This document shows, one piece after another, positions 1-64,000 of a DNA stretch of 64,000 nt; the stretch's first letter is position 1; each line of letters begins with the position of its first letter. The stretch is from Auanema rhodensis. Lineage: Eukaryota; Animalia; Nematoda. The position numbers and the translations under genes are program-made. The notes under the pieces are model-generated. The model was not told where the DNA came from. It saw only the letters and a program-made list of their open reading frames with translations, and searched no databases. The stretch spans positions 9,114,001-9,178,000 of the forward strand of contig OZ059894.1 in NCBI GenBank assembly GCA_964057225.1, given 5' to 3'.

Positions 1-214
1 CTTTCTATTCAATTTGTTCTTTTAATACAATTTTATGAATAGTTTTCAATATATTCTTTCATTTCAAACTTTTCACTATACAGTTGGCGTGCAATGAAAA
101 ATGGGTAACACTTGAATATATTTGTTACGTACTTGGTTCAATTCATCGAGACACTTGTATTCCACGACCCTTGCTGCTTTATCTTATTATTCCTTGACTC
201 CAATTTTGGAAACA

Positions 215-2428: not shown

Positions 2429-2742
2429 TTTTAAGATTTTAAACAATTCTTTAAAAAAATAGTCTATTTGTATGTTTTCTTTTTATTTTGTATTTCTTTC
2501 ATTAATTTTTTAGTGATTTTATACCATTTCGTATTTTCTAATTATTTATAAGGTGTTCTTGTTAATTGTTTTTCTTTTAATTCTGTTACAATTATTATAT
2601 AATTTTATTAATATTCTTGGATTCCAGATCTCTCAATATTGATGTTTTCTTAACATTCGCCTATCTCTTTTTGCTAATTGCAATTTTTAGTTTTTATCGT
2701 ATTTTTAGTTACAGATATAATTATGTGATAAGAAAGATATTC

Positions 2743-11108
<8,366 letters not shown>

Positions 11109-11525
11109 TCTGTCAAAAATCAACTACGTTTATGACATTTAAGAAAGCTCTAGTGATAATTACATCCCTTTGCAAATAATATTATGGGTACTAAACTTGT
11201 TCGCAACTAAATACTGATACAATAACACAAGACCAGTATTCTATCACAGCCGTTTCAGTTTTCAACCTGTATTGAGCACAAATCCTAATACAAACCTAAA
11301 AGAAATCAAGACAATGAAATAAAAATTTGGTAATATAATTCCCTGACGATACCAGATTTCTCAAATAAGCAGACTAACATGTAATTGCATTCCATTACAT
11401 GAACATGAAGATGAAGAGTATTATTCAGATTCGAGGATTCCAGAGTTTGAACATTGGAATTGATTTCAACTGTGGTTTTCTGTTCCTTATAACTCTTCAA
11501 GAATTCTTCATTCTGTCTACTCATA

Positions 11526-11598
11526 GCCTCGATAGCTCAGTTGGGAGAGCGTTAGACTGAAGATCTAAAGGTCACCAGTTCGATCCTGGTTCGGGGCA
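11526..11598 (+). tRNA. tRNA-Phe(GAA), first copy of the array (representative of the + strand copies)
   Basis: GCCTCGATAGCTCAGTTGGGAGAGCGTTAGACTGAAGATCTAAAGGTCACCAGTTCGATCCTGGTTCGGGGCA. It folds into a full cloverleaf: acceptor GCCTCGA/TCGGGGC, D GCTC/GAGC, anticodon TTAGA-CTGAAGA-TCTAA, T ACCAG-TTCGATC-CTGGT. No intron. Confidence 0.99.
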
Positions 11599-11601
11599 AT
11601 G

Positions 11602-11605
11602 TTTT
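11602..11605 (+). terminator. Pol III T4 terminator after the tRNA (present in each unit)
   Basis: TTTT 3 nt after the discriminator base. A second TTTT follows about 25 nt later. Confidence 0.7.
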
Positions 11606-11652
11606 ACCTTCCGACACCTTGCAATATTCCTTTTCTGATTTCTATCGGTCAT

Positions 11653-11675
11653 CTGAATCCTAGCTTAGGTTTCAG
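11653..11675. other. 23-bp imperfect palindrome in the spacer of each full unit
   Basis: CTGAA-T-CCTA-GCT-TAGG-T-TTCAG, with arms CTGAA/TTCAG and CCTA/TAGG. Confidence 0.85.
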
Positions 11676-14600
11676 TAATGAGTATTATTCAGATTCGAGG
11701 ATTCCAGAGTTTGAACATTGGAATTGATTTCAACTGTGGTTTTTTGTTCCTTATAACTCTTCAAGAATTCTTCATTCTTTCTACTCATAGCCTCGATAGC
11801 TCAGTTGGGAGAGCGTTAGACTGAAGATCTAAAGGTCACCAGTTCGATCCTGGTTCGGGGCAATGTTTTACATTCCGACACCTTCCAATATTCCTTTTCT
11901 GAGTTCTATCGGTCATCTGAATCCTAGCTTAGGTTTCAGTAATGAGTATTATTCAGATTCGAGGATTCCAGAGTTTGAACATTGGAATTGATTTCAACTG
12001 TGGTTTTTTGTTCCTTATAACTCTTCAAGAATTCTTTATTCTGTCTACTCATAGCCTCGATAGCTCAGTTGGGAGAGCGTTAGACTGAAGATCTAAAGGT
12101 CACCAGTTCGATCCTGGTTCGGGGCAATGTTTTACCTTCCGACACCTTGAATTATTCCTTTTCTGAGTTCTATCGGTCATCTGAATCCTAGCTTAGGTTT
12201 CAGTAATGAGTATTATTCAGATTCGAGGATTCCAGAGTTTGAACATTGGAATTGATTTCAACTGTGGTTTTTTGTTCCTTATAACTCTTCAAGAATTCTT
12301 CATTCTTTCTACTCATAGCCTCGATAGCTCAGTTGGGAGAGCGTTAGACTGAAGATCTAAAGGTCACCAGTTCGATCCTGGTTCGGGGCAATGTTTTACA
12401 TTCCGACACCTTCCAATATTCCTTTTCTGAGTTCTATCGGTCATCTGAATCCTAGCTTAGGTTTCAGTAATGAGTATTATTCAGATTCGAGGATTCCAGA
12501 GTTTGAACATTGGAATTGATTTCAACTGTGGTTTTTTGTTCCTTATAACTCTTCAAGAATTCTTCATTCTTTCTACTCATAGCCTCGATAGCTCAGTTGG
12601 GAGAGCGTTAGACTGAAGATCTAAAGGTCACCAGTTCGATCCTGGTTCGGGGCAATGTTTTACCTTCCGACACCTTGCAATATTCCTTTTCTGATTTCTA
12701 TCGGTCATCTGAATCCTAGCTTAGGTTTCAGTAATGAGTATTATTCAGATTCGAGGATTCCAGAGTTTGAACATTGGAATTGATTTCAACTGTGGTTTTC
12801 TGTTCCTTATAACTCTTCAAGAATTCTTCATTCTGTCTACTCATAGCCTCGATAGCTCAGTTGGGAGAGCGTTAGACTGAAGATCTAAAGGTCACCAGTT
12901 CGATCCTGGTTCGGGGCAATGTTTTACCTTCCGACACCTTGCAATATTCCTTTTCTGATTTCTATCGGTCATCTGAATCCTAGCTTAGGTTTCAGTAATG
13001 AGTATTATTCAGATTCGAGGATTCCAGAGTTTGAACACTCAAATTGATTTCAACTGTGGTTTTTTGTTCCTTATAACTCTTCAAGAATTCTTTATTCTGT
13101 CTACTCATAGCCTCGATAGCTCAGTTGGGAGAGCGTTAGACTGAAGATCTAAAGGTCACCAGTTCGATCCTGGTTCGGGGCAATGTTTTACCTTCCGACA
13201 CCTTGCAATATTCCTTTTCTGATTTCTATCGGTCATCTGAATCCTAGCTTAGGTTTCAGTAATGAGTATTATTCAGATTCGAGGATTCCAGAGTTTGAAC
13301 ATTGGAATTGATTTCAACTGTGGTTTTTTGTTCCTTATAACTCTTCAAGAATTCTTCATTCTGTCTACTCATAGCCTCGATAGCTCAGTTGGGAGAGCGT
13401 TAGACTGAAGATCTAAAGGTCACCAGTTCGATCCTGGTTCGGGGCAATGTTTTACCTTCCGACACCTTGCAATATTCCTTTTCTGATTTCTATCGGTCAT
13501 CTGAATCCTAGCTTAGGTTTCAGTAATGAGTATTATTCAGATTCGAGGATTCCAGAGTTTGAACACTCAAATTGATTTCAACTGTGGTTTTTTGTTCCTT
13601 ATAACTCTTCAAGAATTCTTTATTCTGTCTACTCATAGCCTCGATAGCTCAGTTGGGAGAGCGTTAGACTGAAGATCTAAAGGTCACCAGTTCGATCCTG
13701 GTTCGGGGCAATGTTTTACCTTCCGACACCTTGCAATATTCCTTTTCTGATTTCTATCGGTCATCTGAATCCTAGCTTAGGTTTCAGTAATGAGTATTAT
13801 TCAGATTCGAGGATTCCAGAGTTTGAACACTCAAATTGATTTCAACTGTGGTTTTCTGTTCCTTATAACTCTTCAAGAATTCTTCATTCTGTCTACTCAT
13901 AGCCTCGATAGCTCAGTTGGGAGAGCGTTAGACTGAAGATCTAAAGGTCACCAGTTCGATCCTGGTTCGGGGCAATGTTTTACATTCCGACACCTTCCAA
14001 TATTCCTTTTCTGAGTTCTATCGGTCATCTGAATCCTAGCTTAGGTTTCAGTAATGAGTATTATTCAGATTCGAGGATTCCAGAGTTTGAACATTGGAAT
14101 TGATTTCAACTGTGGTTTTTTGTTCCTTATAACTCTTCAAGAATTCTTCATTCTTTCTACTCATAGCCTCGATAGCTCAGTTGGGAGAGCGTTAGACTGA
14201 AGATCTAAAGGTCACCAGTTCGATCCTGGTTCGGGGCAATGTTTTACCTTCCGACACCTTGCAATATTCCTTTTCTGATTTCTATCGGTCATCTGAATCC
14301 TAGCTTAGGTTTCAGTAATGAGTATTATTCAGATTCGAGGATTCCAGAGTTTGAACATTGGAATTGATTTCAACTGTGGTTTTCTGTTCCTTATAACTCT
14401 TCAAGAATTCTTCATTCTGTCTACTCATAGCCTCGATAGCTCAGTTGGGAGAGCGTTAGACTGAAGATCTAAAGGTCACCAGTTCGATCCTGGTTCGGGG
14501 CAATGTTTTACCTTCCGACACCTTGCAATATTCCTTTTCTGATTTCTATCGGTCATCTGAATCCTAGCTTAGGTTTCAGTAATGAGTATTATTCAGATTC

Positions 14601-17600
14601 GAGGATTCCAGAGTTTGAACACTCAAATTGATTTCAACTGTGGTTTTTTGTTCCTTATAACTCTTCAAGAATTCTTCATTCTTTCTACTCATAGCCTCGA
14701 TAGCTCAGTTGGGAGAGCGTTAGACTGAAGATCTAAAGGTCACCAGTTCGATCCTGGTTCGGGGCAATGTTTTACATTCCGACACCTTCCAATATTCCTT
14801 TTCTGAGTTCTATCGGTCATCTGAATCCTAGCTTAGGTTTCAGTAATGAGTATTATTCAGATTCGAGGATTCCAGAGTTTGAACATTGGAATTGATTTCA
14901 ACTGTGGTTTTTTGTTCCTTATAACTCTTCAAGAATTCTTCATTCTTTCTACTCATAGCCTCGATAGCTCAGTTGGGAGAGCGTTAGACTGAAGATCTAA
15001 AGGTCACCAGTTCGATCCTGGTTCGGGGCAATGTTTTACCTTCCGACACCTTGCAATATTCCTTTTCTGAGTTCTATCGGTCATCTGAATCCTAGCTTAG
15101 GTTTCAGTAATGAGTATTATTCAGATTCGAGGATTCCAGAGTTTGAACACTCAAATTGATTTCAACTGTGGTTTTTTGTTCCTTATAACTCTTCAAGAAT
15201 TCTTCATTCTTTCTACTCATAGCCTCGATAGCTCAGTTGGGAGAGCGTTAGACTGAAGATCTAAAGGTCACCAGTTCGATCCTGGTTCGGGGCAATGTTT
15301 TACATTCCGACACCTTCCAATATTCCTTTTCTGAGTTCTATCGGTCATCTGAATCCTAGCTTAGGTTTCAGTAATGAGTATTATTCAGATTCGAGGATTC
15401 CAGAGTTTGAACACTCAAATTGATTTCAACTGTGGTTTTTTGTTCCTTATAACTCTTCAAGAATTCTTCATTCTTTCTACTCATAGCCTCGATAGCTCAG
15501 TTGGGAGAGCGTTAGACTGAAGATCTAAAGGTCACCAGTTCGATCCTGGTTCGGGGCAATGTTTTACCTTCCGACACCTTGCAATATTCCTTTTCTGATT
15601 TCTATCGGTCATCTGAAGCCTAGCTTAGGTTTCAGTAATGAGTATTATTCAGATTCGAGGATTCCAGAGTTTGAACATTGGAATTGATTTCAACTGTGGT
15701 TTTTTGTTCCTTATAACTCTTCAAGAATTCTTCATTCTTTCTACTCATAGCCTCGATAGCTCAGTTGGGAGAGCGTTAGACTGAAGATCTAAAGGTCACC
15801 AGTTCGATCCTGGTTCGGGGCAATGTTTTACCTTCCGACACCTTGCAATATTCCTTTTCTGATTTCTATCGGTCATCTGAAGCCTAGCTTAGGTTTCAGT
15901 AATGAGTATTATTCAGATTCGAGGATTCCAGAGTTTGAACATTGGAATTGATTTCAACTGTGGTTTTTTGTTCCTTATAACTCTTCAAGAATTCTTTATT
16001 CTGTCTACTCATAGCCTCGATAGCTCAGTTGGGAGAGCGTTAGACTGAAGATCTAAAGGTCACCAGTTCGATCCTGGTTCGGGGCAATGTTTTACCTTCC
16101 GACACCTTGAATTATTCCTTTTCTGAGTTCTATCGGTCATCTGAATCCTAGCTTAGGTTTCAGTAATGAGTATTATTCAGATTCGAGGATTCCAGAGTTT
16201 GAACATTGGAATTGATTTCAACTGTGGTTTTTTGTTCCTTATAACTCTTCAAGAATTCTTTATTCTGTCTACTCATAGCCTCGATAGCTCAGTTGGGAGA
16301 GCGTTAGACTGAAGATCTAAAGGTCACCAGTTCGATCCTGGTTCGGGGCAATGTTTTACCTTCCGACACCTTGCAATATTCCTTTTCTGATTTCTATCGG
16401 TCATCTGAATCCTAGCTTAGGTTTCAGTAATGAGTATTATTCAGATTCGCGGATACCAGAGTTTGAACATTGGAATTGATTTCAACTGTGGTTTTTTGTT
16501 CCTTATAACTCTTCAAGAATTCTTCATTCTTTCTACTCATAGCCTCGATAGCTCAGTTGGGAGAGCGTTAGACTGAAGATCTAAAGGTCACCAGTTCGAT
16601 CCTGGTTCGGGGCAATGTTTTACCTTCCGACACCTTGCAATATTCCTTTTCTGATTTCTATCGGTCATCTGAATCCTAGCTTAGGTTTCAGTAATGAGTA
16701 TTATTCAGATTCGAGGATTCCAGAGTTTGAACATTGGAATTGATTTCAACTGTGGTTTTTTGTTCCTTATAACTCTTCAAGAATTCTTTATTCTGTCTAC
16801 TCATAGCCTCGATAGCTCAGTTGGGAGAGCGTTAGACTGAAGATCTAAAGGTCACCAGTTCGATCCTGGTTCGGGGCAATGTTTTACCTTCCGACACCTT
16901 GAATTATTCCTTTTCTGAGTTCTATCGGTCATCTGAATCCTAGCTTAGGTTTCAGTAATGATTATTATTCAGATTCGAGGATTCCAGAGTTTGAACATTG
17001 GAATTGATTTCAACTGTGGTTTTTTGTTCCTTATAACTCTTCAAGAATTCTTTATTCTGTCTACTCATAGCCTCGATAGCTCAGTTGGGAGAGCGTTAGA
17101 CTGAAGATCTAAAGGTCACCAGTTCGATCCTGGTTCGGGGCAATGTTTTACCTTCCGACACCTTGCAATATTCCTTTTCTGATTTCTATCGGTCATCTGA
17201 AGCCTAGCTTAGGTTTCAGTAATGAGTATTATTCAGATTCGAGGATTCCAGAGTTTGAACATTGGAATTGATTTCAACTGTGGTTTTTTGTTCCTTATAA
17301 CTCTTCAAGAATTCTTTATTCTGTCTACTCATAGCCTCGATAGCTCAGTTGGGAGAGCGTTAGACTGAAGATCTAAAGGTCACCAGTTCGATCCTGGTTC
17401 GGGGCAATGTTTTACCTTCCGACACCTTGCAATATTCCTTTTCTGATTTCTATCGGTCATCTGAATCCTAGCTTAGGTTTCAGTAATGAGTATTATTCAG
17501 ATTCCAGGATTCCAGAGTTTGAACACTCAAATTGATTTCAACTGTGGTTTTCTGTTCCTTATAACTCTTCAAGAATTCTTCATTCTGTCTACTCATAGCC

Positions 17601-20600
17601 TCGATAGCTCAGTTGGGAGAGCGTTAGACTGAAGATCTAAAGGTCACCAGTTCGATCCTGGTTCGGGGCAATGTTTTACCTTCCGACACCTTGCAATATT
17701 CCTTTTCTGATTTCTATCGGTCATCTGAAGCCTAGCTTAGGTTTCAGTAATGAGTATTATTCAGATTCGAGGATTCCAGAGTTTGAACATTGGAATTGAT
17801 TTCAACTGTGGTTTTTTGTTCCTTATAACTCTTCAAGAATTCTTTATTCTGTCTACTCATAGCCTCGATAGCTCAGTTGGGAGAGCGTTAGACTGAAGAT
17901 CTAAAGGTCACCAGTTCGATCCTGGTTCGGGGCAATGTTTTACCTTCCGACACCTTGCAATATTCCTTTTCTGATTTCTATCGGTCATCTGAATCCTAGC
18001 TTAGGTTTCAGTAATGAGTATTATTCAGATTCCAGGATTCCAGAGTTTGAACACTCAAATTGATTTCAACTGTGGTTTTCTGTTCCTTATAACTCTTCAA
18101 GAATTCTTCATTCTGTCTAGTCATAGCCTCGATAGCTCAGTTGGGAGAGCGTTAGACTGAAGATCTAAAGGTCACCAGTTCGATCCTGGTTCGGGGCAAT
18201 GTTTTACATTCCGACACCTTCCAATATTCCTTTTCTGAGTTCTATCGGTCATCTGAATCCTAGCTTAGGTTTCAGTAATGAGTATTATTCAGATTCGCGG
18301 ATTCCAGAGTTTGAACATTGGAATTGATTTCAACTGTGGTTTTTTGTTCCTTATAACTCTTCAAGAATTCTTCATTCTTTCTACTCATAGCCTCGATAGC
18401 TCAGTTGGGAGAGCGTTAGACTGAAGATCTAAAGGTCACCAGTTCGATCCTGGTTCGGGGCAATGTTTTACATTCCGACACCTTGCAATATTCCTTTTCT
18501 GATTTCTATCGGTCATCTGAATCCTAGCTTAGGTTTCAGTAATGAGTATTATTCAGATTCGAGGATTCCAGAGTTTGAACATTGGAATTGATTTCAACAG
18601 TGGTTTTTTGTTCCTTATAACTCTTCAAGAATTCTTCATTCTGTTTACTCATAGCCTCGATAGCTCAGTTGGGAGAGCGTTAGACTGAAGATCTAAAGGT
18701 CACCAGTTCGATCCTGGTTCGGGGCAATGTTTTACATTCCGACACCTTCCAATATTCCTTTTCTGAGTTCTATCGGTCATCTGAATCCTAGCTTAGGTTT
18801 CAGTAATGAGTATTATTCAGATTCGCGGATTCCAGAGTTTGAACATTGGAATTGATTTCAACTGTGGTTTTTTGTTCCTTATAACTCTTCAAGAATTCTT
18901 CATTCTTTCTACTCATAGCCTCGATAGCTCAGTTGGGAGAGCGTTAGACTGAAGATCTAAAGGTCACCAGTTCGATCCTGGTTCGGGGCAATGTTTTACC
19001 TTCCGACACCTTGCAATATTCCTTTTCTGAGTTCTATCGGTCATCTGAATCCTAGCTTAGGTTTCAGTAATGAGTATTATTCAGATTCGCGGATTCCAGA
19101 GTTTGAACATTGGAATTGATTTCAACTGTGGTTTTTTGTTCCTTATAACTCTTCAAGAATTCTTCATTCTTTCTACACATAGCCTCGATAGCTCAGTTGT
19201 GAGAGCGTTAGACTGAAGATCTAAAGGTCACCAGTTCGATCCTGGTTCGGGGCAATGTTTTACATTCCGACACCTTCCAATATTCCTTTTCTGAGTTCTA
19301 TCGGTCATCTGAATCCTAGCTTAGGTTTCAGTAATGAGTATTATTCAGATTCGCGGATTCCAGAGTTTGAACATTGGAATTGATTTCAACTGTGGTTTTT
19401 TGTTCCTTATAACTCTTCAAGAATTCTTCATTCTTTCTACTCATAGCCTCGATAGCTCAGTTGGGAGAGCGTTAGACTGAAGATCTAAAGGTCACCAGTT
19501 CGATCCTGGTTCGGGGCAATGTTTTACATTCCGACACCTTCCAATATTCCTTTTCTGAGTTCTATCGGTCATCTGAATCCTAGCTTAGGTTTCAGTAATG
19601 AGTATTATTCAGATTCGCGGATTCCAGAGTTTGAACATTGGAATTGATTTCAACTGTGGTTTTTTGTTCCTTATAACTCTTCAAGAATTCTTCATTCTTT
19701 CTACTCATAGCCTCGATAGCTCAGTTGGGAGAGCGTTAGACTGAAGATCTAAAGGTCACCAGTTCGATCCTGGTTCGGGGCAATGTTTTACATTCCGACA
19801 CCTTCCAATATTCCTTTTCTGATTTCTATCGGTCATCTGAAGCCTAGCTTAGGTTTCAGTAATGAGTATTATTCAGATTCGAGGATTCCAGAGTTTGAAC
19901 ATTGGAATTGATTTCAACTGTGGTTTTTTGTTCCTTATAACTCTTCAAGAATTCTTCATTCTTTCTACTCATAGCCTCGATAGCTCAGTTGGGAGAGCGT
20001 TAGACTGAAGATCTAAAGGTCACCAGTTCGATCCTGGTTCGGGGCAATGTTTTACCTTCCGACACCTTGAATTATTCCTTTTCTGAGTTCTATCGGTCAT
20101 CTGAATCCTAGCTTAGGTTTCAGTAATGAGTATTATTCAGATTCGAGGATTCCAGAGTTTGAACATTGGAATTGATTTCAACTGTGGTTTTTTGTTCCTT
20201 ATAACTCTTCAAGAATTCTTTATTCTGTCTACTCATAGCCTCGATAGCTCAGTTGGGAGAGCGTTAGACTGAAGATCTAAAGGTCACCAGTTCGATCCTG
20301 GTTCGGGGCAATGTTTTACCTTCCGACACCTTGAATTATTCCTTTTCTGAGTTCTATCGGTCATCTGAATCCTAGCTTAGGTTTCAGTAATGAGTATTAT
20401 TCAGATTCGAGGATTCCAGAGTTTGAACATTGGAATTGATTTCAACTGTGGTTTTTTGTTCCTTATAACTCTTCAAGAATTCTTTATTCTGTCTACTCAT
20501 AGCCTCGATAGCTCAGTTGGGAGAGCGTTAGACTGAAGATCTAAAGGTCACCAGTTTGATCCTGGTTCGGGGCAATGTTTTACCTTCCGACACCTTGAAT

Positions 20601-23405: not shown

Positions 23406-23594
23406 GCCTCGATAGCTCAGTTGGGAGAGCGTTAGACTGAAGATCTAAAGGTCACCAGTTCGATCCTGGTTCGGGGCAATGTTTTAGTATTATTCAGATT
23501 CGAGGATTCCAGAGTTTGAACATTGGAATTGATTTCAACTGTGGTTTTTTGTTCCTTATAACTCTTCAAGAATTCTTTATTCTGTCTACTCATA
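23406..23594 (+). repeat. 189-bp deletion-variant unit (75-bp spacer deletion); the same junction recurs at ~30539 and ~31256
   Basis: Junction CAATGTTTTA|GTATTATTC. tRNA-to-tRNA spacing is 189 at 23406-23595, 30459-30648 and 31176-31365. Confidence 0.95.
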
Positions 23595-53300: not shown

Positions 53301-56300
53301 GAGTAGACAGAATAAAGATTTCTTGAAGAGTTATCAGGAACAAAAAACCACAGTTCAAATCAATTCCAATGTTCAAACTCTGGAATCCTCGAATCTGAAT
53401 AATACTCATTACTGAAACCTAAGCTAGGATTCAGATGACCGATAGAACTCAGAAAAGGAATATTGGAAGGTGTCGGAAGGTAAAACATTGCCCCGAACCA
53501 GGATCGAACTGGTGACCTTTAGATCTTCAGTCTAACGCTCTCCCAACTGAGCTATCGAGGCTATGAGTAGACAGAATAAAGAATTCTTGAAGAGTTATAA
53601 GGAACAAAAAACCACTGTTCAAATCAATTCCAATGTTCAAACTCTGGAATCCTGGAATCTGAATAATACTCATTACTGAAACCTAAGCTAGGATTCAGAT
53701 GACCGATAGAACTCAGAAAAGGAATAATTCAAGGTGTCGGAAGGTAAAACATTGCCCCGAACCAGGATCGAACTGGTGACCTTTAGATCTTCAGTCTAAC
53801 GCTCTCCCAACTGAGCTATCGAGGCTATGAGTAGACAGAATAAAGAATTCTTGAAGAGTTATCAAGAACAGAAAACCACAGTTGAAATCAATTCGAGTGT
53901 TCAAACTCTGGAATCCTCGAATCTGAATAATACTCATTACTGAAACCGAAACTAGGATTCAGATGACCGATAGAACTCAGAAAAAGAATATTTCAAGGTG
54001 TCGGAATGTAAAACATTGCCCCGAACCAGGATCGAACTGGTGACCTTTAGATCTTCAGTCTAACGCTCTCCCAACTGAGCTATCGAGGCTATGAGTAGAC
54101 AGAATAAAGAATTCTTGAAGAGTTATCAAGAACAGAAAACCACAGTTGAAATCAATTCGAGTGTTCAAACTCTGGAATCCTTGAATCTGAATAATACTCA
54201 TTACTGAAACCTAAGCTAGGATTCAGATGACCGATAGAACTCAGAAAAAGAATATTTCAAGGTGTCGGAAGGTAAAACATTGCCCCGAACCAGGATCGAA
54301 CTGGTGACCTTTAGATCTTCAGTCTAACGCTCTCCCAACTGAGCTATCGAGGCTATGAGTAGACAGAATAAAGAATTCTTGAAGAGTTATCAGGAACAGA
54401 AAACCACAGTTGAAATCAATTCGAGTGTTCAAACTCTGGAATCCTCGAATCTGAATAATACTCATTACTGAAACCGAAACTAGGATTCAGATGACCGATA
54501 GAACTCAGAAAAAGAATATTTCAAGGTGTCGGAATGTAAAACATTGCCCCGAACCAGGATCGAACTGGTGACCTTTAGATCTTCAGTCTAACGCTCTCCC
54601 AACTGAGCTATCGAGGCTATGAGTAGACAGAATAAAGAATTCTTGAAGAGTTATCAAGAACAGAAAACCACAGTTGAAATCAATTCGAGTGTTCAAACTC
54701 TGGAATCCTCGAATCTGAATAATACTCATTACTGAAACCGAAACTAGGATTCAGATGACCGATAGAACTCAGAAAAAGAATATTTCAAGGTGTCGGAATG
54801 TAAAACATTGCCCCGAACCAGGATCGAACTGGTGACCTTTAGATCTTCAGTCTAACGCTCTCCCAACTGAGCTATCGAGGCTATGAGTAGACAGAATAAA
54901 GATTTCTTGAAGAGTTATCAAGAACAGAAAACCACAGTTGAAATCAATTCGAGTGTTCAAACTCTGGAATCCTTGAATCTGAATAATACTCATTACTGAA
55001 ACCGAAACTAGGATTCAGATGACCGATAGAACTCAGAAAAAGAATATTTCAAGGTGTCGGAAGGTAAAACATTGCCCCGAACCAGGATCGAACTGGTGAC
55101 CTTTAGATCTTCAGTCTAACGCTCTCCCAACTGAGCTATCGAGGCTATGAGTAGACAGAATAAAGAATTCTTGAAGAGTTATCAGGAACAGAAAACCACA
55201 GTTGAAATCAATTCCAATGTTCAAACTCTGGAATCCTGGAATCTGAATAATACTCATTACTGAAACCTAAGCTAGGATTCAGATGACCGATAGAACTCAG
55301 AAAAGGAATAATTCAAGGTGTCGGAAGGTAAAACATTGCCCCGAACCAGGATCGAACTGGTGACCTTTAGATCTTCAGTCTAACGCTCTCCCAACTGAGC
55401 TATCGAGGCTATGAGTAGACAGAATAAAGAATTCTTGAAGAGTTATCAAGAACAGAAAACCACAGTTGAAATCAATTCGAGTGTTCAAACTCTGGAATCC
55501 TCGAATCTGAATAATACTCATTACTGAAACCGAAACTAGGGTTCAGATGACCGATAGAACTCAGAAAAAGAATATTTCAAGGTGTCGGAATGTAAAACAT
55601 TGCCCCGAACCAGGATCGAACTGGTGACCTTTAGATCTTCAGTCTAACGCTCTCCCAACTGAGCTATCGAGGCTATGAGTAGACAGAATAAAGAATTCTT
55701 GAAGAGTTATAAGGAACAAAAAACCACAGTTGAAATCAATTCCAATGTTCAAACTCTGGAATCCTCGAATCTGAATAATACTCATTACTGAAACCTAAGC
55801 TAGGATTCAGATGACCGATAGAACTCAGAAAAGGAATAATTCAAGGTGTCGGAATGTAAAACATTGCCAGGAACCATGATCGAACTGGTGACCTTTAGAT
55901 CTTCAGTCTAACGCTCTCCCAACTGAGCTATCGAGGCTATGAGTAGACAGAATAAAGAATTCTTGAAGAGTTATCAAGAACAGAAAACCACAGTTGAAAT
56001 CAATTCGAGTGTTCAAACTCTGGAATCCTCGAATCTGAATAATACTCATTACTGAAACCTAAGCTAGGATTCAGATGACCGATAGAACTCAGAAAAGGAA
56101 TAATTCAAGGTGTCGGAATGTAAAACATTGCCAGGAACCATGATCGAACTGGTGACTTTTAGATCTTCAGTCTAACGCTCTCCCAACTGAGCTATCGAGG
56201 CTATGAGTAGACAGAATAAAGAATTCTTGAAGAGTTATCAAGAACAGAAAACCACAGTTGAAATCAATTCGAGTGTTCAAACTCTGGAATCCTCGAATCT

Positions 56301-59300
56301 GAATAATACTCATTACTGAAACCGAAACTAGGATTCAGATGACCGATAGAACTCAGAAAAAGAATATTTCAAGGTGTCGGAATGTAAAACATTGCCCCGA
56401 ACCAGGATCGAACTGGTGACCTTTAGATCTTCAGTCTAACGCTCTCCCAACTGAGCTATCGAGGCTATGAGTAGACAGAATAAAGAATTCTTGAAGAGTT
56501 ATCAGGAACAGAAAACCACAGTTGAAATCAATTCCAATGTTCAAACTCTGGAATCCTCGAATCTGAATAATACTCATTACTGAAACCTAAGCTAGGATTC
56601 AGATGACCGATAGAACTCAGAAAAGGAATAATTCAAGGTGTCGGAATGTAAAACATTGCCAGGAACCATGATCGAACTGGTGACCTTTAGATCTTCAGTC
56701 TAACGCTCTCCCAACTGAGCTATCGAGGCTATGAGTAGACAGAATAAAGAATTCTTGAAGAGTTATCAAGAACAGAAAACCACAGTTGAAATCAATTCGA
56801 GTGTTCAAACTCTGGAATCCTCGAATCTGAATAATACTCATTACTGAAACCTAAGCTAGGATTCAGATGACCGATAGAACTCAGAAAAGGAATAATTCAA
56901 GGTGTCGGAATGTAAAACATTGCCAGGAACCATGATCGAACTGGTGACTTTTAGATCTTCAGTCTAACGCTCTCCCAACTGAGCTATCGAGGCTATGAGT
57001 AGACAGAATAAAGAATTCTTGAAGAGTTATCAAGAACAGAAAACCACAGTTGAAATCAATTCGAGTGTTCAAACTCTGGAATCCTCGAATCTGAATAATA
57101 CTCATTACTGAAACCGAAACTAGGATTCAGATGACCGATAGAACTCAGAAAAAGAATATTTCAAGGTGTCGGAATGTAAAACATTGCCCCGAACCAGGAT
57201 CGAACTGGTGACCTTTAGATCTTCAGTCTAACGCTCTCCCAACTGAGCTATCGAGGCTATGAGTAGACAGAATAAAGAATTCTTGAAGAGTTATCAGGAA
57301 CAGAAAACCACAGTTGAAATCAATTCGAGTGTTCAAACTCTGGAATCCTGGAATCTGAATAATACTCATTACTGAAACCGAAACTAGGATTCAGATGACC
57401 GATAGAACTCAGAAAAAGAATATTTCAAGGTGTCGGAATGTAAAACATTGCCCCGAACCAGGATCGAACTGGTGACCTTTAGATCTTCAGTCTAACGCTC
57501 TCCCAACTGAGCTATCGAGGCTATGAGTAGACAGAATAAAGAATTCTTGAAGAGTTATCAGGAACAGAAAACCACAGTTGAAATCAATTCGAGTGTTCAA
57601 ACTCTGGAATCCTGGAATCTGAATAATACTCATTACTGAAACCGAAACTAGGATTCAGATGACCGATAGAACTCAGAAAAAGAATATTTCAAGGTGTCGG
57701 AATGTAAAACATTGCCCCGAACCAGGATCGAACTGGTGACCTTTAGATCTTCAGTCTAACGCTCTCCCAACTGAGCTATCGAGGCTATGAGTAGACAGAA
57801 TAAAGAATTCTTGAAGAGTTATCAGGAACAGAAAACCACAGTTGAAATCAATTCGAGTGTTCAAACTCTGGAATCCTCGAATCTGAATAATACTCATTAC
57901 TGAAACCTAAGCTAGGATTCAGATGACCGATAGAACTCAGAAAAAGAATATTTCAAGGTGTCGGAATGTAAAACATTGCCCCGAACCAGGATCGAACTGG
58001 TGACCTTTAGATCTTCAGTCTAACGCTCTCCCAACTGAGCTATCGAGGCTATGAGTAGACAGAATAAAGAATTCTTGAAGAGTTATCAGGAACAGAAAAC
58101 CACAGTTGAAATCAATTCGAGTGTTCAAACTCTGGAATCCTCGAATCTGAATAATACTCATTACTGAAACCTAAGCTAGGATTCAGATGACCGATAGAAC
58201 TCAGAAAAAGAATATTTCAAGGTGTCGGAATGTAAAACATTGCCCCGAACCAGGATCGAACTGGTGACCTTTAGATCTTCAGTCTAACGCTCTCCCAACT
58301 GAGCTATCGAGGCTATGAGTAGACAGAATAAAGAATTCTTGAAGAGTTATCAAGAACAGAAAACCACAGTTGAAATCAATTCGAGTGTTCAAACTCTGGA
58401 ATCCTCGAATCTGAATAATACTCATTACTGAAACCGAAACTAGGATTCAGATGACCGATAGAACTCAGAAAAAGAATATTTCAAGGTGTCGGAATGTAAA
58501 ACATTGCCCCGAACCAGGATCGAACTGGTGACCTTTAGATCTTCAGTCTAACGCTCTCCCAACTGAGCTATCGAGGCTATGAGTAGACAGAATAAAGAAT
58601 TCTTGAAGAGTTATCAGGAACAGAAAACCACAGTTGAAATCAATTCGAGTGTTCAAACTCTGGAATCCTGGAATCTGAATAATACTCATTACTGAAACCT
58701 AAGCTAGGATTCAGATGACCGATAGAACTCAGAAAAAGAATATTTCAAGGTGTCGGAATGTAAAACATTGCCCCGAACCAGGATCGAACTGGTGACCTTT
58801 AGATCTTCAGTCTAACGCTCTCCCAACTGAGCTATCGAGGCTATGAGTAGACAGAATAAAGAATTCTTGAAGAGTTATCAAGAACAGAAAACCACAGTTG
58901 AAATCAATTCGAGTGTTCAAACTCTGGAATCCTCGAATCTGAATAATACTCATTACTGAAACCGAAACTAGGATTCAGATGACCGATAGAACTCAGAAAA
59001 AGAATATTTCAAGGTGTCGGAATGTAAAACATTGCCCCGAACCAGGATCGAACTGGTGACCTTTAGATCTTCAGTCTAACGCTCTCCCAACTGAGCTATC
59101 GAGGCTATGAGTAGACAGAATAAAGAATTCTTGAAGAGTTATAAGGAACAAAAAACCACAGTTGAAATCAATTCCAATGTTCAAACTCTGGAATCCTCGA
59201 ATCTGAATAATACTCATTACTGAAACCTAAGCTAGGATTCAGATGACCGATAGAACTCAGAAAAGGAATAATTCAAGGTGTCGGAATGTAAAACATTGCC

Positions 59301-62300
59301 AGGAACCATGATCGAACTGGTGACCTTTAGATCTTCAGTCTAACGCTCTCCCAACTGAGCTATCGAGGCTATGAGTAGACAGAATAAAGAATTCTTGAAG
59401 AGTTATCAAGAACAGAAAACCACAGTTGAAATCAATTCGAGTGTTCAAACTCTGGAATCCTCGAATCTGAATAATACTCATTACTGAAACCTAAGCTAGG
59501 ATTCAGATGACCGATAGAACTCAGAAAAGGAATAATTCAAGGTGTCGGAATGTAAAACATTGCCAGGAACCATGATCGAACTGGTGACCTTTAGATCTTC
59601 AGTCTAACGCTCTCCCAACTGAGCTATCGAGGCTATGAGTAGACAGAATAAAGAATTCTTGAAGAGTTATCAAGAACAGAAAACCACAGTTGAAATCAAT
59701 TCGAGTGTTCAAACTCTGGAATCCTCGAATCTGAATAATACTCATTACTGAAACCGAAACTAGGATTCAGATGACCGATAGAACTCAGAAAAAGAATATT
59801 TCAAGGTGTCGGAATGTAAAACATTGCCCCGAACCAGGATCGAACTGGTGACCTTTAGATCTTCAGTCTAACGCTCTCCCAACTGAGCTATCGAGGCTAT
59901 GAGTAGACAGAATAAAGAATTCTTGAAGAGTTATCAGGAACAGAAAACCACAGTTGAAATCAATTCGAGTGTTCAAACTCTGGAATCCTGGAATCTGAAT
60001 AATACTCATTACTGAAACCTAAGCTAGGATTCAGATGACCGATAGAACTCAGAAAAGGAATAATTCAAGGTGTCGGAAGGTAAAACATTGCCCCGAACCA
60101 GGATCGAACTGGTGACCTTTAGATCTTCAGTCTAACGCTCTCCCAACTGAGCTATCGAGGCTATGAGTAGACAGAATAAAGAATTCTTGAAGAGTTATAA
60201 GGAACAAAAAACCACAGTTGAAATCAATTCCAATGTTCAAACTCTGGAATCCTCGAATCTGAATAATACTCATTACTGAAACCTAAGCTAGGATTCAGAT
60301 GACCGATAGAACTCAGAAAAGGAATAATTCAAGGTGTCGGAATGTAAAACATTGCCAGGAACCATGATCGAACTGGTGACCTTTAGATCTTCAGTCTAAC
60401 GCTCTCCCAACTGAGCTATCGAGGCTATGAGTAGACAGAATAAAGAATTCTTGAAGAGTTATCAAGAACAGAAAACCACAGTTGAAATCAATTCGAGTGT
60501 TCAAACTCTGGAATCCTCGAATCTGAATAATACTCATTACTGAAACCTAAGCTAGGATTCAGATGACCGATAGAACTCAGAAAAGGAATAATTCAAGGTG
60601 TCGGAATGTAAAACATTGCCAGGAACCATGATCGAACTGGTGACTTTTAGATCTTCAGTCTAACGCTCTCCCAACTGAGCTATCGAGGCTATGAGTAGAC
60701 AGAATAAAGAATTCTTGAAGAGTTATCAAGAACAGAAAACCACAGTTGAAATCAATTCGAGTGTTCAAACTCTGGAATCCTCGAATCTGAATAATACTCA
60801 TTACTGAAACCTAAGCTAGGATTCAGATGACCGATAGAACTCAGAAAAGGAATAATTCAAGGTGTCGGAATGTAAAACATTGCCAGGAACCATGATCGAA
60901 CTGGTGACCTTTAGATCTTCAGTCTAACGCTCTCCCAACTGAGCTATCGAGGCTATGAGTAGACAGAATAAAGAATTCTTGAAGAGTTATCAAGAACAGA
61001 AAACCACAGTTGAAATCAATTCGAGTGTTCAAACTCTGGAATCCTCGAATCTGAATAATACTCATTACTGAAACCGAAACTAGGATTCAGATGACCGATA
61101 GAACTCAGAAAAAGAATATTTCAAGGTGTCGGAATGTAAAACATTGCCCCGAACCAGGATCGAACTGGTGACCTTTAGATCTTCAGTCTAACGCTCTCCC
61201 AACTGAGCTATCGAGGCTATGAGTAGACAGAATAAAGAATTCTTGAAGAGTTATCAGGAACAGAAAACCACAGTTGAAATCAATTCGAGTGTTCAAACTC
61301 TGGAATCCTGGAATCTGAATAATACTCATTACTGAAACCTAAGCTAGGATTCAGATGACCGATAGAACTCAGAAAAGGAATAATTCAAGGTGTCGGAAGG
61401 TAAAACATTGCCCCGAACCAGGATCGAACTGGTGACCTTTAGATCTTCAGTCTAACGCTCTCCCAACTGAGCTATCGAGGCTATGAGTACACAGAATGAA
61501 GAATTCTTGAAGAGTTATAAGGAACAAAAAACCACAGTTGAAATCAATTCGAGTGTTCAAACTCTGGAATCCTTAAATCTGAATAATACTCATTACTGAA
61601 ACCTAAGCTAGGATTCAGATGACCGATAGAACTCAGAAAAAGAATATTTCAAGGTGTCGGAAGGTAAAACATTGCCCCGAACCAGGATCGAACTGGTGAC
61701 CTTTAGATCTTCAGTCTAACGCTCTCCCAACTGAGCTATCGAGGCTATGAGTAGACAGAATAAAGAATTCTTGAAGAATTATCAGGAACAGAAAACCACA
61801 GTTGAAATCAATTCGAGTGTTCAAACTCTGGAATCCTGGAAACTGAATAATACTCATTACTGAAACCTAAGCTAGGATTCAGATGACCGATAGAACTCAG
61901 AAAAAGAATAATTCAAGGTGTCGGAAGGTAAAACATTGCCCCGAACCAGGATCGAACTGGTGACCTTTAGATCTTCAGTCTAACGCTCTCCCAACTGAGC
62001 TATCGAGGCTATGAGTAGACAGAATAAAGAATTCTTGAAGAGTTATCAAGAACAGAAAACCACAGTTGAAATCAATTCGAGTGTTCAAACTCTGGAATCC
62101 TCGAATCTGAATAATACTCATTACTGAAACCGAAACTAGGATTCAGATGACCGATAGAACTCAGAAAAAGAATATTTCAAGGTGTCGGAAGGTAAAACAT
62201 TGCCCCAAACCAGGATCGAACTGGTGACCTTTAGATCTTCAGTCTAACGCTCTCCCAACTGAGCTATCGAGGCTATGAGTAGACAGAATAAAGAATTCTT

Positions 62301-64000
62301 GAAGAGTTATCAGGAACAGAAAACCACAGTTGAAATCAATTCGAGTGTTCAAACTCTGGAATCCTGGAAACTGAATAATACTCATTACTGAAACCTAAGC
62401 TAGGATTCAGATGACCGATAGAACTCAGAAAAGGAATAATTCAAGGTGTCGGAAGGTAAAACATTGCCCCGAACCAGGATCGAACTGGTGACCTTTAGAT
62501 CTTCAGTCTAACGCTCTCCCAACTGAGCTATCGAGGCTATGAGTACACAGAATGAAGAATTCTTGAAGAGTTATAAGGAAGAAAAAACCACAGTTGAAAT
62601 CAATTCGAGTGTTCAAACTCTGGAATCCTTAAATCTGAATAATACTCATTACTGAAACCTAAGCTAGGATTCAGATGACCGATAGAACTCAGAAAAAGAA
62701 TATTTCAAGGTGTCGGAAGGTAAAACATTGCCCCGAACCAGGATCGAACTGGTGACCTTTAGATCTTCAGTCTAACGCTCTCCCAACTGAGCTATCGAGG
62801 CTATGAGTACACAGAATAAAGAATTCTTGAAGAGTTATCAAGAACAGAAAACCACAGTTGAAATCAATTCGAGTGTTCAAACTCTGGAATCCTCGAATCT
62901 GAATAATACTCATTACTGAAACCGAAACTAGGATTCAGATGACCGATAGAACTCAGAAAAAGAATATTTCAAGGTGTCGGAAGGTAAAACATTGCCCCGA
63001 ACCAGGATCGAACTGGTGACCTTTAGATCTTCAGTCTAACGCTCTCCCAACTGAGCTATCGAGGCTATGAGTACACAGAATGAAGATTTCTTGAAGAGTT
63101 ATCAGTGTCAGAAAACCACTGTTGTAATCAATTCGAGTGTTCAAACTCTGGAATCCTTGAATCTGAATAATACTCATTACTGAAACCGAAACTAGGATTC
63201 AGATGACCGATAGAACTCAGAAAAAGAATATTTCAAGGTGTCGGAAGGTAAAACATTGCCCCGAACCAGGATCGAACTGGTGACCTTTAGATCTTCAGTC
63301 TAACGCTCTCCCAACTGAGCTATCGAGGCTATGAGTAGACAGAATAAAGAATTCTTGAAGAGTTATCAGGAACAGAAAACCACAGTTGAAATCAATTCGA
63401 GTGTTCAAACTCTAGAATCCTCGAATCTGAATAATACTCATTACTGAAACCGAAACTAGGATTCAGATGACCGATAGAACTCAGAAAAAGAATATTTCAA
63501 GGTGTCGGAATGTAAAACATTGCCCCGAACCAGGATCGAACTGGTGACCTTTAGATCTTCAGTCTAACGCTCTCCCAACTGAGCTATCGAGGCTATGAGT
63601 AGACAGAATAAAGAATTCTTGAAGAGTTATAAGGAACAGAAAACCACAGTTGAAATCAATTCGAGTGTTCAAACTCTAGAATCCTCGAATCTGAATAATA
63701 CTCATTACTGAAACCGAAACTAGGATTCAGATGACCGATAGAACTCAGAAAAAGAATATTTCAAGGTGTCGGAATGTAAAACATTGCCCCGAACCAGGAT
63801 CTAACTGGTGACCTTTAGATCTTCAGTCTAACGCTCTCCCAACTGAGCTATCGAGGCTATGAGTAGACAGAATAAAGAAGTCTTGAAGAGTTATAAGGAA
63901 CAGAAAACCACAGTTGAAATCAATTCGAGTGTTCAAACTCTAGAATCCTCGAATCTGAATAATACTCATTACTGAAACCGAAACTAGGATTCAGATGACC
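47336..64000 (-). repeat. Inverted tRNA-Phe array, distal - arm, about 63 copies, continuing past the window end
   Basis: tRNA 3' ends run from 47417 to 63785 (62x264). Confidence 0.98.
55865..60953 (-). pseudogene. Nine interspersed defective tRNA-Phe copies sharing three substitutions
   Basis: TGCCAGGAACCATGATCG replaces TGCCCCGAACCAGGATCG at 55865, 56129, 56657, 56921, 59297, 59561, 60353, 60617 and 60881. The changes are C61A in the T-stem/B-box and two acceptor-stem mismatches. Confidence 0.85.

What the first reader, a model, noticed from the sequence alone, without database searches (positions are those of the whole stretch)
11416..64000. Satellite-scale array of about 186 mostly intact tRNA-Phe(GAA) genes
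Seen: 264-bp period, one tRNA per unit with A/B boxes and a T4 terminator, and the array is still running at the window end. Known: C. elegans has only on the order of ten to twenty dispersed tRNA-Phe genes. Tandem tRNA arrays are known in Entamoeba and some other eukaryotes. Inference: the copy number far exceeds ordinary decoding need. It could be a germline/oocyte tRNA amplification, a source of tRNA fragments, or a structural chromatin domain (TFIIIC/condensin platform, pairing or elimination block).
Basis: partly seen in the sequence, partly recalled or inferred. Interest (0 to 1): 0.75.

Follow-up and report, generated by a model that had tools for sequence, protein, structure and literature searches.

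The report
Huge tandem tRNA-Phe gene array, nematode
A nematode related to Auanema (not C. elegans) carries at least 186 tandem copies of a 264-bp unit, each a complete phenylalanine-tRNA gene; the finding is striking, but similar arrays are already described in two other nematodes.

Summary
From 11416 to the window end there is a 264-bp tandem repeat with one tRNA-Phe(GAA) per unit: 185 ARAGORN calls and 186 Rfam hits. Of the 185, 163 share one 73-nt sequence. A and B boxes are present, and a T4 run follows 184 of 185 genes.

- The array switches strand at about 37856, giving 101 genes on + and 84 on −, pointing toward each other.
- A 3,558-bp LTR-like element with identical LTRs sits at 43778-47335.
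- There are three 189-bp units and a 9-unit higher-order repeat.
- Ten copies are damaged.

The organism is not C. elegans. The complete flanking HEATR5/soap-1 gene is closest to Auanema sp. JU1783 (single-exon matches 71-86% identical). Caenorhabditis proteins match at only 38-47%.

Diversity in the tRNA segment is about six-fold lower than in the spacers. No tRNA variant is carried by more than 9 units, whereas spacer variants reach 78. Singletons are equally dense in both. This points to long-term constraint on the tRNA, so a working or recently working multi-copy Pol III locus shaped by unequal exchange.

Massive single-tRNA arrays are published for Nippostrongylus brasiliensis, and germline-restricted ones for Auanema rhodense. 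This is a new member of a known kind. Expression, true copy number and germline restriction could not be tested.

The parts
11416..37856 (+). Plus-strand arm of the array: 101 units, each with one tRNA-Phe(GAA). Genes run from 11526 to 37773.
   Evidence: TRF; ARAGORN; Rfam.
11416..11679 (+). Representative 264-bp unit: 110 bp upstream spacer, 73-nt tRNA, 81 bp downstream spacer.
   Evidence: Unit consensus and register; sequence.
11526..11598 (+). tRNA-Phe(GAA), the canonical 73-nt copy. Anticodon GAA, G20 and A73 present, no intron.
   Evidence: ARAGORN; Rfam 68.6 bits; sequence read directly.
11533..11544 (+). A-box region, tRNA positions 8-19.
   Evidence: Read from the sequence. The consensus is from established knowledge of type 2 Pol III promoters.
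11577..11587 (+). B-box region, tRNA positions 52-62, with G53 to C61 intact.
   Evidence: Read from the sequence.
11602..11605 (+). T4 run 4 nt after the tRNA 3' end, the presumed Pol III terminator.
   Evidence: Present within 12 nt of the 3' end in 184 of 185 units.
11487..11492 (+). TATA-like TTATAA at -39 to -34 from the mature 5' end. 54 units have TGATAA instead.
   Evidence: Counts per unit. A role in TFIIIB placement is inference.
11475..11480 (+). Upstream T run, T6 in 127 units and T4CT in 55, about 50 bp before each gene. It could act as a backstop terminator for read-through from the previous unit.
   Evidence: Counts per unit. The role is inference.
23406..23667 (+). First of three short units with 189-bp gene spacing. 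A 75-bp deletion starts right after the T4 run. The other two are at about 30459-30720 and 31176-31437.
   Evidence: Spacing; alignment; TRF 189-bp and 453-bp rows.
37852..37862 (.). Strand-switch junction. Unit position 5 on + is joined to unit position about 81 on -. The join is asymmetric, with 1-2 bp of possible microhomology.
   Evidence: Sequence. Units at mirror positions are no more alike than random pairs.
37857..43777 (-). Proximal minus-strand block: 21 intact genes plus 1 broken one. Its unit variants resemble those of the + arm.
   Evidence: block-to-block distances of 5.7-6.8 to the + arm blocks, against 9.7-11.7 to the distal block.
42246..42343 (-). tRNA copy broken by a 25-bp internal tandem duplication.
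   Evidence: TRF row 42278-42328; sequence; Rfam 59.3 bits over 98 nt.
43778..47335 (+). LTR-like insertion of 3,558 bp. It has 345-bp LTRs, a 4-5 bp target duplication ATTA(C), TGG directly after the 5' LTR and a purine tract before the 3' LTR. No protein domain was found.
   Evidence: LTRs 345/345 identical.
43778..44122 (+). 5' LTR.
46991..47335 (+). 3' LTR.
47336..64000 (-). Distal minus-strand block: 63 genes, still running at the window end. Its unit subfamily is more divergent.
47400..55700 (-). Region with a 9-unit (2,376-bp) higher-order repeat.
   Evidence: Haplotype string. Self-identity is 98.3% at a lag of 9 units and 96.1-96.6% at lags 4-7.
55865..60953 (-). Span holding 9 tRNA copies that share C61A, G68C and G69U. 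These changes break the B box/T stem and the acceptor stem. Three of the nine also carry G45A.
   Evidence: Rfam 49.6-50.4 bits against 68.6 for the canonical copy.
2743..11096 (+). Flanking gene: a complete, spliced HEATR5/soap-1 orthologue that ends 320 bp before the array.
   Evidence: Pfam PF20210 and PF25468 on exons. tblastn of the Auanema sp. JU1783 protein covers residues 1-2046 of 2048.

Best explanation
This is a real tandem gene array. A 264-bp unit is repeated at least 186 times. Each unit is a self-contained RNA polymerase III type 2 gene for a canonical cytoplasmic tRNA-Phe(GAA). It lies directly beside an ordinary protein-coding gene in a rhabditid nematode close to Auanema.

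How each unit is proposed to work (inferred from the parts present): TFIIIC binds the internal A and B boxes. TFIIIB then sits about 30-40 bp upstream, where most units have a TATA-like hexamer. Pol III starts just upstream of the tRNA and stops at the T4 run four bases after it. A second T run upstream of each gene would catch read-through from the previous unit.

How the array evolves (shown by its variant pattern): it grows and is homogenised by unequal exchange and gene conversion between units. That produced local subfamilies, a 9-unit higher-order repeat and three copies of one 75-bp deletion. It has also undergone one inversion and one very recent LTR-element insertion.

Function: the tRNA segment has been held constant over the period in which the spacers diversified. 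The array is therefore best read as a working, or until recently working, high-dosage tRNA-Phe locus and not as dead satellite DNA. It compares with 5S rDNA arrays and with the single-tRNA arrays reported in Nippostrongylus and Auanema. How many copies are transcribed, and in which tissue, is not known.
For: Parts of the unit:
- Full-length Rfam tRNA matches at 68.6 bits.
- Anticodon GAA with G20 and A73.
- B-box core G53 to C61 intact in the canonical copy.
- T4 run after 184 of 185 genes; upstream T run and TATA-like hexamer counted per unit.

Constraint on the tRNA:
- Nucleotide diversity is 0.0063 in the tRNA and about 0.04 in both spacers.
- Singleton sites are equally dense: 7 of 73 against 16 of 191.
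- Shared-variant sites are depleted: 6 of 73 against 37 of 191 (Fisher P = 0.039).
- No tRNA variant is carried by more than 9 units. 24 spacer sites have variants carried by 11-78 units (Mann-Whitney P = 0.017-0.026).
- 185.7 units are expected and 186 tRNAs are found, so there is no detection bias.

Turnover by exchange:
- Block structure and a higher-order repeat.
- The same 75-bp deletion at three places.

Context and precedent:
- A complete HEATR5 gene ends 320 bp from the array.
- N. brasiliensis has about 150 tRNA-Trp units of about 200 bp and 90 tRNA-Ser units (PMC5765664).
- A. rhodense has 19,554 tRNA loci, only 215 called pseudogenes, with tRNA arrays among its tandem repeats.
Against: - No expression, Pol III occupancy or read-depth data could be consulted, so activity is inferred only from intact parts and from the variation pattern.
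- Variable sites are linked within subfamilies. The statistical support for constraint is therefore moderate (P about 0.02-0.04), not overwhelming.
- The newest mutations show no constraint. Singletons include changes at invariant positions such as C56 and G57. Ten copies are clearly damaged, and one damaged haplotype has spread to 9 units.
- Clustered tRNA genes can be intact and still silent, as in Arabidopsis (PMC7544208).
- The strand switch could be an assembly error.
Confidence: 0.6

Rival explanations
1. Essentially neutral or selfish satellite DNA that happened to be seeded by a tRNA gene. On this view the copies look intact because the array is young and constantly homogenised, and most or all of them are silenced.
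For: - Satellite hallmarks: 97-99% unit identity, a higher-order repeat, a strand switch and a transposon insertion.
- Recent mutations hit invariant tRNA positions as often as they hit spacers.
- A damaged tRNA haplotype has been amplified to 9 copies.
- Arabidopsis tandem tRNA clusters are epigenetically silenced in most tissues (PMC7544208).
Against: - Youth alone does not explain why all 24 high-frequency variant sites lie in the spacers and none in the 73-nt tRNA. About 9 would be expected from the spacer density.
- Terminator and box elements are kept in almost every unit.
- Silent arrays can be reactivated locally (PMC12308677), so silence in most tissues would not make the array functionless.
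Confidence: 0.3
2. Germline-restricted repeat block. On this view the array belongs to DNA that is cut out of somatic cells early in development, as in Auanema rhodense. It would serve the germline, as a tRNA supply or a chromosome-behaviour domain, or it would simply be tolerated there.
For: - The nearest sampled relative of the source organism is an Auanema.
- In A. rhodense, arrays of 5S rRNA, several tRNA loci and U2 are reported among germline-restricted tandem repeats.
- Each LTR of the inserted element carries a 29-nt degenerate palindrome with GGC-N3-GCC at positions 11-13 and 17-19. That is the layout of the elimination motif of Oscheius tipulae (PMC13060919). The expected number of such palindromes by chance is about 0.005.
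Against: - No such motif and no telomere repeat lies between the HEATR5 gene and the array. At this edge the array would therefore share the fate of a gene that is probably needed in the soma.
- tRNA density here is 27.6% of the sequence. The A. rhodense paper states that ncRNA density is always below 20% per 10 kb, so this may be another species whose elimination status is unknown.
- The palindrome's flanks are GC-rich, not AT-rich as described for the known motifs.
- The spacing of the AGG element from the core differs by 1 nt from the O. tipulae consensus.
Confidence: 0.2
3. Assembly artefact. On this view the copy number is inflated, or the inverted arm is a chimeric or fold-back join made by a long-read assembler.
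For: Long uniform arrays and strand switches are classic sites of misassembly. The window ends inside the array, so its far edge is not seen. No reads were available.
Against: - The two arms are not mirror images. Units at mirror positions differ by 2-10 bases, like random pairs.
- The junction is asymmetric, joining unit position 5 to position about 81.
- The array has structured, non-random variants: subfamily blocks, a higher-order repeat and a unique insertion with a target-site duplication. Collapsed or duplicated reads would not create these.
Confidence: 0.1

Closest known systems
Massive single-tRNA tandem repeats ('VeCTRs') of Nippostrongylus brasiliensis (Eccles et al. 2018, PMC5765664)
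   Same: A clade V nematode. About 150 copies of a roughly 200-bp unit carry a conserved tRNA-Trp plus a species-specific spacer, and 90 copies carry tRNA-Ser with an 80-bp spacer. That is one intact tRNA per short unit at satellite scale.
   Different: Different isotype (Phe), unit length (264 bp) and species. That paper reports no strand switch, higher-order repeat, transposon insertion or constraint analysis.
tRNA, 5S and U2 arrays in germline-restricted DNA of Auanema rhodense (bioRxiv 10.64898/2026.08.27.747507)
   Same: The closest sampled lineage to the source of this window. That genome has 19,554 tRNA loci, almost all scored as intact, and tandem blocks of tRNA genes among its tandem repeats.
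   Different: Whether this window is from that species is not shown. Stated ncRNA density there is below 20% per 10 kb, against 27.6% here. Germline restriction could not be tested here. The table listing the isotypes was not readable.
Arabidopsis thaliana tandem tRNA clusters: the Ser/Tyr/Tyr cluster on chromosome 1 and the Pro and Cys clusters (PMC2886086, PMC7544208, PMC12308677)
   Same: Tandemly repeated units of intact tRNA genes that evolve by unequal exchange. They raise the same question of silent versus active copies.
   Different: Plant, tens of units not hundreds, and three genes per unit in the main cluster. Silencing there uses DNA methylation; whether the source nematode methylates its DNA is not known.
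Entamoeba tRNA arrays (PMC2652664)
   Same: tRNA genes organised as long tandem arrays that make up a sizeable part of the genome.
   Different: Units hold up to 5 different tRNAs, sometimes with 5S, separated by short tandem repeats, and almost all tRNA genes of the genome are in arrays. Here there is one tRNA per unit and no short tandem repeat in the spacer.
5S rDNA arrays and Xenopus oocyte-type Pol III gene arrays (general knowledge)
   Same: Short Pol III genes with internal promoters and T-run terminators, repeated hundreds of times for dosage and homogenised by unequal exchange.
   Different: A different gene class and promoter type (type 1 for 5S). A developmental switch is documented there and is unknown here.

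Membership tests
Eukaryotic nuclear tRNA-Phe(GAA) gene (Pol III type 2) | Cloverleaf tRNA that matches the tRNA covariance model over its full length | tested here: met
   RF00005 at 68.6 bits, model positions 1-71 of 71, gathering score 29. ARAGORN tRNA-Phe.
Eukaryotic nuclear tRNA-Phe(GAA) gene (Pol III type 2) | Anticodon GAA and the known Phe identity positions (G20, G34, A35, A36, A73) | tested here: met
   Read from the 73-nt majority sequence. The list of identity positions comes from general knowledge of PheRS recognition.
Eukaryotic nuclear tRNA-Phe(GAA) gene (Pol III type 2) | Internal A and B boxes and a downstream T-run terminator | tested here: met
   Boxes read from the sequence. 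T4 within 12 nt of the 3' end in 184 of 185 units.
Eukaryotic nuclear tRNA-Phe(GAA) gene (Pol III type 2) | Transcribed, processed and aminoacylated | not testable with these tools
   No expression or occupancy data are available.
Nematode single-tRNA tandem arrays (N. brasiliensis / A. rhodense type) | Short unit (about 150-300 bp) with one intact tRNA plus a lineage-specific spacer, repeated about 90 times or more | tested here: met
   264-bp unit, at least 186 copies. The spacer has no Rfam match and no exact match in the metagenome collection.
Nematode single-tRNA tandem arrays (N. brasiliensis / A. rhodense type) | The host is a rhabditid nematode | tested here: met
   The flanking HEATR5 gene matches Auanema sp. 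JU1783 best, then strongylids. A sn3071-like snoRNA lies in one of its introns.
Nematode single-tRNA tandem arrays (N. brasiliensis / A. rhodense type) | Germline-restricted, that is, eliminated from the soma (A. rhodense only) | not testable with these tools
   Needs germline versus somatic read coverage. No break motif or telomere repeat was found at the gene/array edge.
Satellite DNA | Long tandem array with local subfamilies, higher-order repeats and strand switches | tested here: met
Satellite DNA | No constraint on any part of the monomer | tested here: not met
   The tRNA segment has about six-fold lower diversity and no high-frequency variants.
Entamoeba-type tRNA array | Several different tRNAs per unit, separated by short tandem repeats | tested here: not met
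   One tRNA per unit. Within units, TRF finds only the 25-bp duplication in one copy.
tRNA-derived SINE | Dispersed copies with a tRNA-related head, a body, an A-rich or simple-repeat tail and target-site duplications | tested here: not met
   Copies are strictly tandem, the tRNA is complete and canonical, and there is no tail.
Sequence For Elimination (SFE) motif of rhabditid programmed DNA elimination (tested for the palindrome in the LTRs) | 29-bp degenerate palindrome with GGC at positions 11-13 and GCC at 17-19 | tested here: met
   43836-43864 and 47049-47077: 10 of 14 pairs and the exact core layout. 4 of 1,000 shuffles reach this. Motif description from PMC13060919.
Sequence For Elimination (SFE) motif of rhabditid programmed DNA elimination (tested for the palindrome in the LTRs) | Match to the outer consensus (TTTA at 1-4, AGGT at 4-7 in O. 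tipulae) and AT-rich flanks | tested here: inconclusive
   AGG is present but shifted by 1 nt. Positions 1-4 differ and the flanks are GC-rich. The A. rhodense motif is shown only in a figure.
Sequence For Elimination (SFE) motif of rhabditid programmed DNA elimination (tested for the palindrome in the LTRs) | Site of breakage and telomere addition in somatic cells | not testable with these tools
   Needs somatic long reads.

The most novel reading that the evidence does not exclude
The array, or its part distal to 43.8 kb, is germline-restricted DNA in a species that practises programmed DNA elimination. The elimination-motif-like palindrome carried in both LTRs of the inserted element would then be a functional or potential break and telomere-addition site. 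That would mean a mobile element can carry elimination signals into new places, here into a tRNA gene array. It would redraw which DNA the soma keeps.
Probability: 0.12. Interest if true: 0.8.

Novelty: new member of a known kind. Interest (0 to 1): 0.42.

Why it matters
Long-read assemblies are only now showing how many tRNA genes some nematodes carry and how those genes are arranged. This array adds a third well-resolved case of a satellite-scale single-tRNA array. It is also the first of the three for which the internal variation has been read unit by unit.

That variation shows long-term constraint on the tRNA but none on the newest mutations. This is what one expects when selection acts on the array as a whole and hardly at all on single copies.

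If the source species eliminates DNA from the soma, the array would be a handy test case. One could ask whether such gene arrays serve the germline, and whether break motifs can travel on transposons.

Tried and rejected
Searches that found nothing:
- Exact scans of the metagenome collection with a spacer 29-mer and a 40-mer of the tRNA 3' half.
- Exact look-up of three short ORFs that run through the repeat unit.
- PDB search with one HEATR5 exon.
- Pfam on seven ORFs of the LTR element and on five ORFs in 1-2300 (only weak sub-threshold hits).
- Rfam with permissive thresholds on three units, to ask whether the spacer hides a second RNA; only the tRNAs matched.
- Telomere repeat (TTAGGC)3 with up to 2 mismatches.
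- Literature searches for a tRNA-Phe array or a 264-bp tRNA repeat. The supplementary table of the A. rhodense preprint that lists eliminated ncRNA genes is not held as text.

Ideas tested and rejected:
- The source is C. elegans or another Caenorhabditis.
- The two arms are a fold-back palindrome: no mirror symmetry.
- An elimination-type palindrome sits at the gene/array boundary: only an 8+8 inverted repeat with an 8-nt loop at 11378-11401, and no GGC-N-GCC core.
- The units are tRNA-derived SINEs, or an Entamoeba-type array.

Limits of the tools and methods:
- A minimum-free-energy fold of the bare tRNA did not give a cloverleaf. This is usual for unmodified tRNA, and the covariance model was used instead.
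- The HEATR5 gene was searched exon by exon by reference, and by aligning database proteins to the window.
- The window is not human.

Full report

Yes.
- Tandem Repeats Finder reports a 264-bp period from 11416 to the last base of the window, with scores of 10,285 to 30,852 and 88-98% matches.
- ARAGORN tRNA-Phe(GAA) genes.
- The Rfam tRNA model gives 186 matches above its gathering score, most at 68.6 bits against a threshold of 29.
- After removing a 3,558-bp insertion, the array holds 185.7 unit lengths. Practically every unit therefore carries a detected tRNA.
- 163 of the 185 called genes have one identical 73-nt sequence.
- That sequence has anticodon GAA, G20, A73, an A-box region at positions 8-19 and an intact B-box core G53 to C61, and no intron.
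- A T4 run lies four bases after the 3' end in 184 of 185 units.

**2.

- **The array is not one head-to-tail block.** 101 genes lie on the + strand (11526-37773) and 84 on the - strand (38022-63857). The two sets are transcribed toward each other.
- **The join at about 37856 is asymmetric.** It links position 5 of a + unit to about position 81 of a - unit.
- **The arms are not mirror images.** Their variant strings differ. Units at mirror positions differ by 2-10 bases, no less than random pairs. This argues against a fold-back read artefact, although only reads could settle it.
- **The sequence-family boundary is not at the strand switch.** The first 5.9 kb of the - arm resembles the + arm (block distances 5.7-6.8). 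The - arm beyond 47.3 kb is a more divergent subfamily (distances 8.9-11.7).
- **A transposon separates those two - blocks.** It is a 3,558-bp LTR-like element at 43778-47335. It has 345-bp LTRs identical at all 345 positions, a 4-5 bp target duplication, TGG right after the 5' LTR and a purine tract before the 3' LTR. No Pfam domain was found in its ORFs. It looks like a young, non-autonomous insertion.
- **Smaller irregularities:**
  - Three units share the same 75-bp deletion, which begins right after the T4 run.
  - One tRNA is split by a 25-bp internal duplication.
  - Nine copies between 55.8 and 61.0 kb share C61A, G68C and G69U and score 49.6-50.4 bits instead of 68.6.
  - A 9-unit higher-order repeat lies at 47.4-55.7 kb. 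Self-identity is 98.3% at a lag of 9 units and 96.1-96.6% at lags 4-7.

**3. Surroundings and organism.**

The left flank holds a complete spliced gene on the + strand, at about 2743-11096. Its exons hit the Laa1/Sip1/HEATR5 and HEATR5A-like Pfam families.

I searched one exon by reference with the word search and with the all-against-all HMMER search. I then named the best representatives. All were nematode HEATR5B proteins.

I next used the Caenorhabditis angaria protein to collect named orthologues and aligned them to the window with tblastn:

| Protein source | Match to the window |
|---|---|
| Auanema sp. JU1783 | 2,680 bits; single-exon matches 71-86% identical; residues 1-2046 of 2048 covered |
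| Strongylids | about 50% identity |
| Caenorhabditis species | 38-47% identity |
| Caenorhabditis species among themselves | 61-71% identity |

The source is therefore a rhabditid close to Auanema, not C. elegans. All searches were by exon reference or by aligning database proteins to the window.

An intron of the gene holds a C/D-box snoRNA resembling the sn3071 family, at 38.6 bits against a gathering score of 40. The gene ends 320 bp before the array, so on this side the array abuts ordinary genic DNA. The window is not human.

**4. Is the tRNA under constraint?**

I cut the array into 185 units in tRNA register and compared variation by position in the 182 full-length units.

| Measure | tRNA (73 nt) | Spacers (191 nt) | Source |
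|---|---|---|---|
| Nucleotide diversity | 0.0063 | about 0.04 in each spacer | |
| Singleton sites | 7 | 16 | |
| Sites with a variant in 2 or more units | 6 | 37 (Fisher P = 0.039) | |
| Sites with a variant in 11 or more units | 0 | 24 (up to 78 units) | |
| Largest number of units sharing a variant | 9 | 78 | |

The Mann-Whitney test on minor-allele counts gives P = 0.017-0.026.

My reading is as follows. Mutations enter the tRNA and the spacer at similar rates, and several singletons hit invariant positions such as C56 and G57. Variants in the tRNA have not been allowed to spread through the array over the time in which spacer subfamilies arose. This fits selection on the array's output as a whole, with very weak selection on any one copy.

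The caveat is that variable sites are linked within subfamilies. The number of independent events is smaller than the number of sites, so the support is moderate.

**5. Mechanism.**

- *Shown:* each unit has every sequence element of a type 2 Pol III gene.
- *Inferred:* TFIIIC binds the A and B boxes. TFIIIB takes position upstream, where 121 units carry TTATAA at -39 to -34 and 54 carry TGATAA. Transcription ends at the T4 run. An upstream T6 or T4CT run about 50 bp before each gene could stop read-through from the preceding unit.
- *Shown by the variant pattern:* the array turns over by unequal exchange and conversion. The evidence is the blocks, the higher-order repeat and the repeated identical deletion. 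It has also had one inversion and one recent transposon hit.
- *Not shown:* whether and where the copies are transcribed, the true copy number, and the far end of the array.

**6. Comparison with what is known.**

- Eccles et al. [quoted passage not shown] They noted that C. elegans has nothing comparable.
- A 2026 preprint on Auanema rhodense (10.64898/2026.08.27.747507) annotates 19,554 tRNA loci with only 215 pseudogenes. It reports arrays of 5S rRNA, several tRNA loci and U2 among germline-restricted tandem repeats.
- Arabidopsis tandem tRNA clusters are intact yet silenced in most tissues, and are reactivated in root tips (PMC7544208, PMC12308677).
- Entamoeba arrays differ in having several tRNAs and short tandem repeats per unit (PMC2652664).

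The present array meets the features of the nematode single-tRNA array type. It fails the 'no constraint' feature of plain satellite DNA, and it is neither an Entamoeba-type array nor a SINE family.

**7. A lead noticed in passing.**

Programmed DNA elimination in Oscheius tipulae uses a 29-bp degenerate palindrome with GGC at positions 11-13 and GCC at 17-19 (PMC13060919). The A. rhodense motif is said to be similar.

I scanned the window for that layout. Nothing lies between the HEATR5 gene and the array. Each LTR of the inserted element, however, carries such a palindrome at 43836-43864 and 47049-47077. It has 10 of 14 matched pairs and the exact core spacing. About 0.005 such sites are expected by chance in the 14.6 kb of unique sequence, and 4 of 1,000 shuffles reach this level.

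It differs from the O. tipulae consensus in three ways. The outer positions differ, the AGG element is shifted by one base, and the flanks are GC-rich. This is a lead, not a finding.

**8. Verdict.**

- The best-supported reading is a working or recently working high-dosage tRNA-Phe gene array that evolves like a satellite. It is a new member of a kind already described in nematodes.

Noticed in passing
window 43836-43864 and 47049-47077 (one in each LTR): A 29-nt degenerate palindrome with 10 of 14 matched pairs, GGC at positions 11-13 and GCC at 17-19. This is the core layout of the nematode elimination motif (SFE) described for Oscheius tipulae. About 0.005 are expected by chance. The outer positions and GC-rich flanks do not match well.
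   Followed up: partly
window 43778-47335: A young, non-autonomous LTR-like element: identical 345-bp LTRs, target duplication ATTA(C), TGG after the 5' LTR, and no recognisable protein domain. The A. rhodense preprint mentions five high-scoring elimination motifs spaced 3.5 kb apart in one 14-kb region. The LTR-to-LTR spacing here is 3,213 bp.
   Followed up: partly
window 3419-3495 (+): A C/D-box snoRNA resembling Rfam sn3071 (38.6 bits, gathering score 40, E = 5e-7 locally), inside an intron of the HEATR5 gene.
   Followed up: partly
window 2743-11096 (+): A complete HEATR5/soap-1 orthologue with short introns of roughly 40-60 bp. The organism's own protein is absent from the protein collections searched, and the nearest is Auanema sp. 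JU1783.
   Followed up: yes
window 11378-11401: An inverted repeat with 8-bp arms and an 8-nt loop, 15 bp before the first array unit. It has no GGC/GCC core and could be chance.
   Followed up: partly
window 1-2700: No convincing gene. ORFs on both strands give only sub-threshold Pfam hits. One ORF at 122-364 (+) encodes a charged, helical-looking peptide.
   Followed up: partly
window 11416-17000: Neighbouring units tend to alternate between two spacer variants (unit positions 39 and 41), which hints at a weak dimeric repeat. Self-identity at a lag of 2 units is only slightly above that at a lag of 1.
   Followed up: partly
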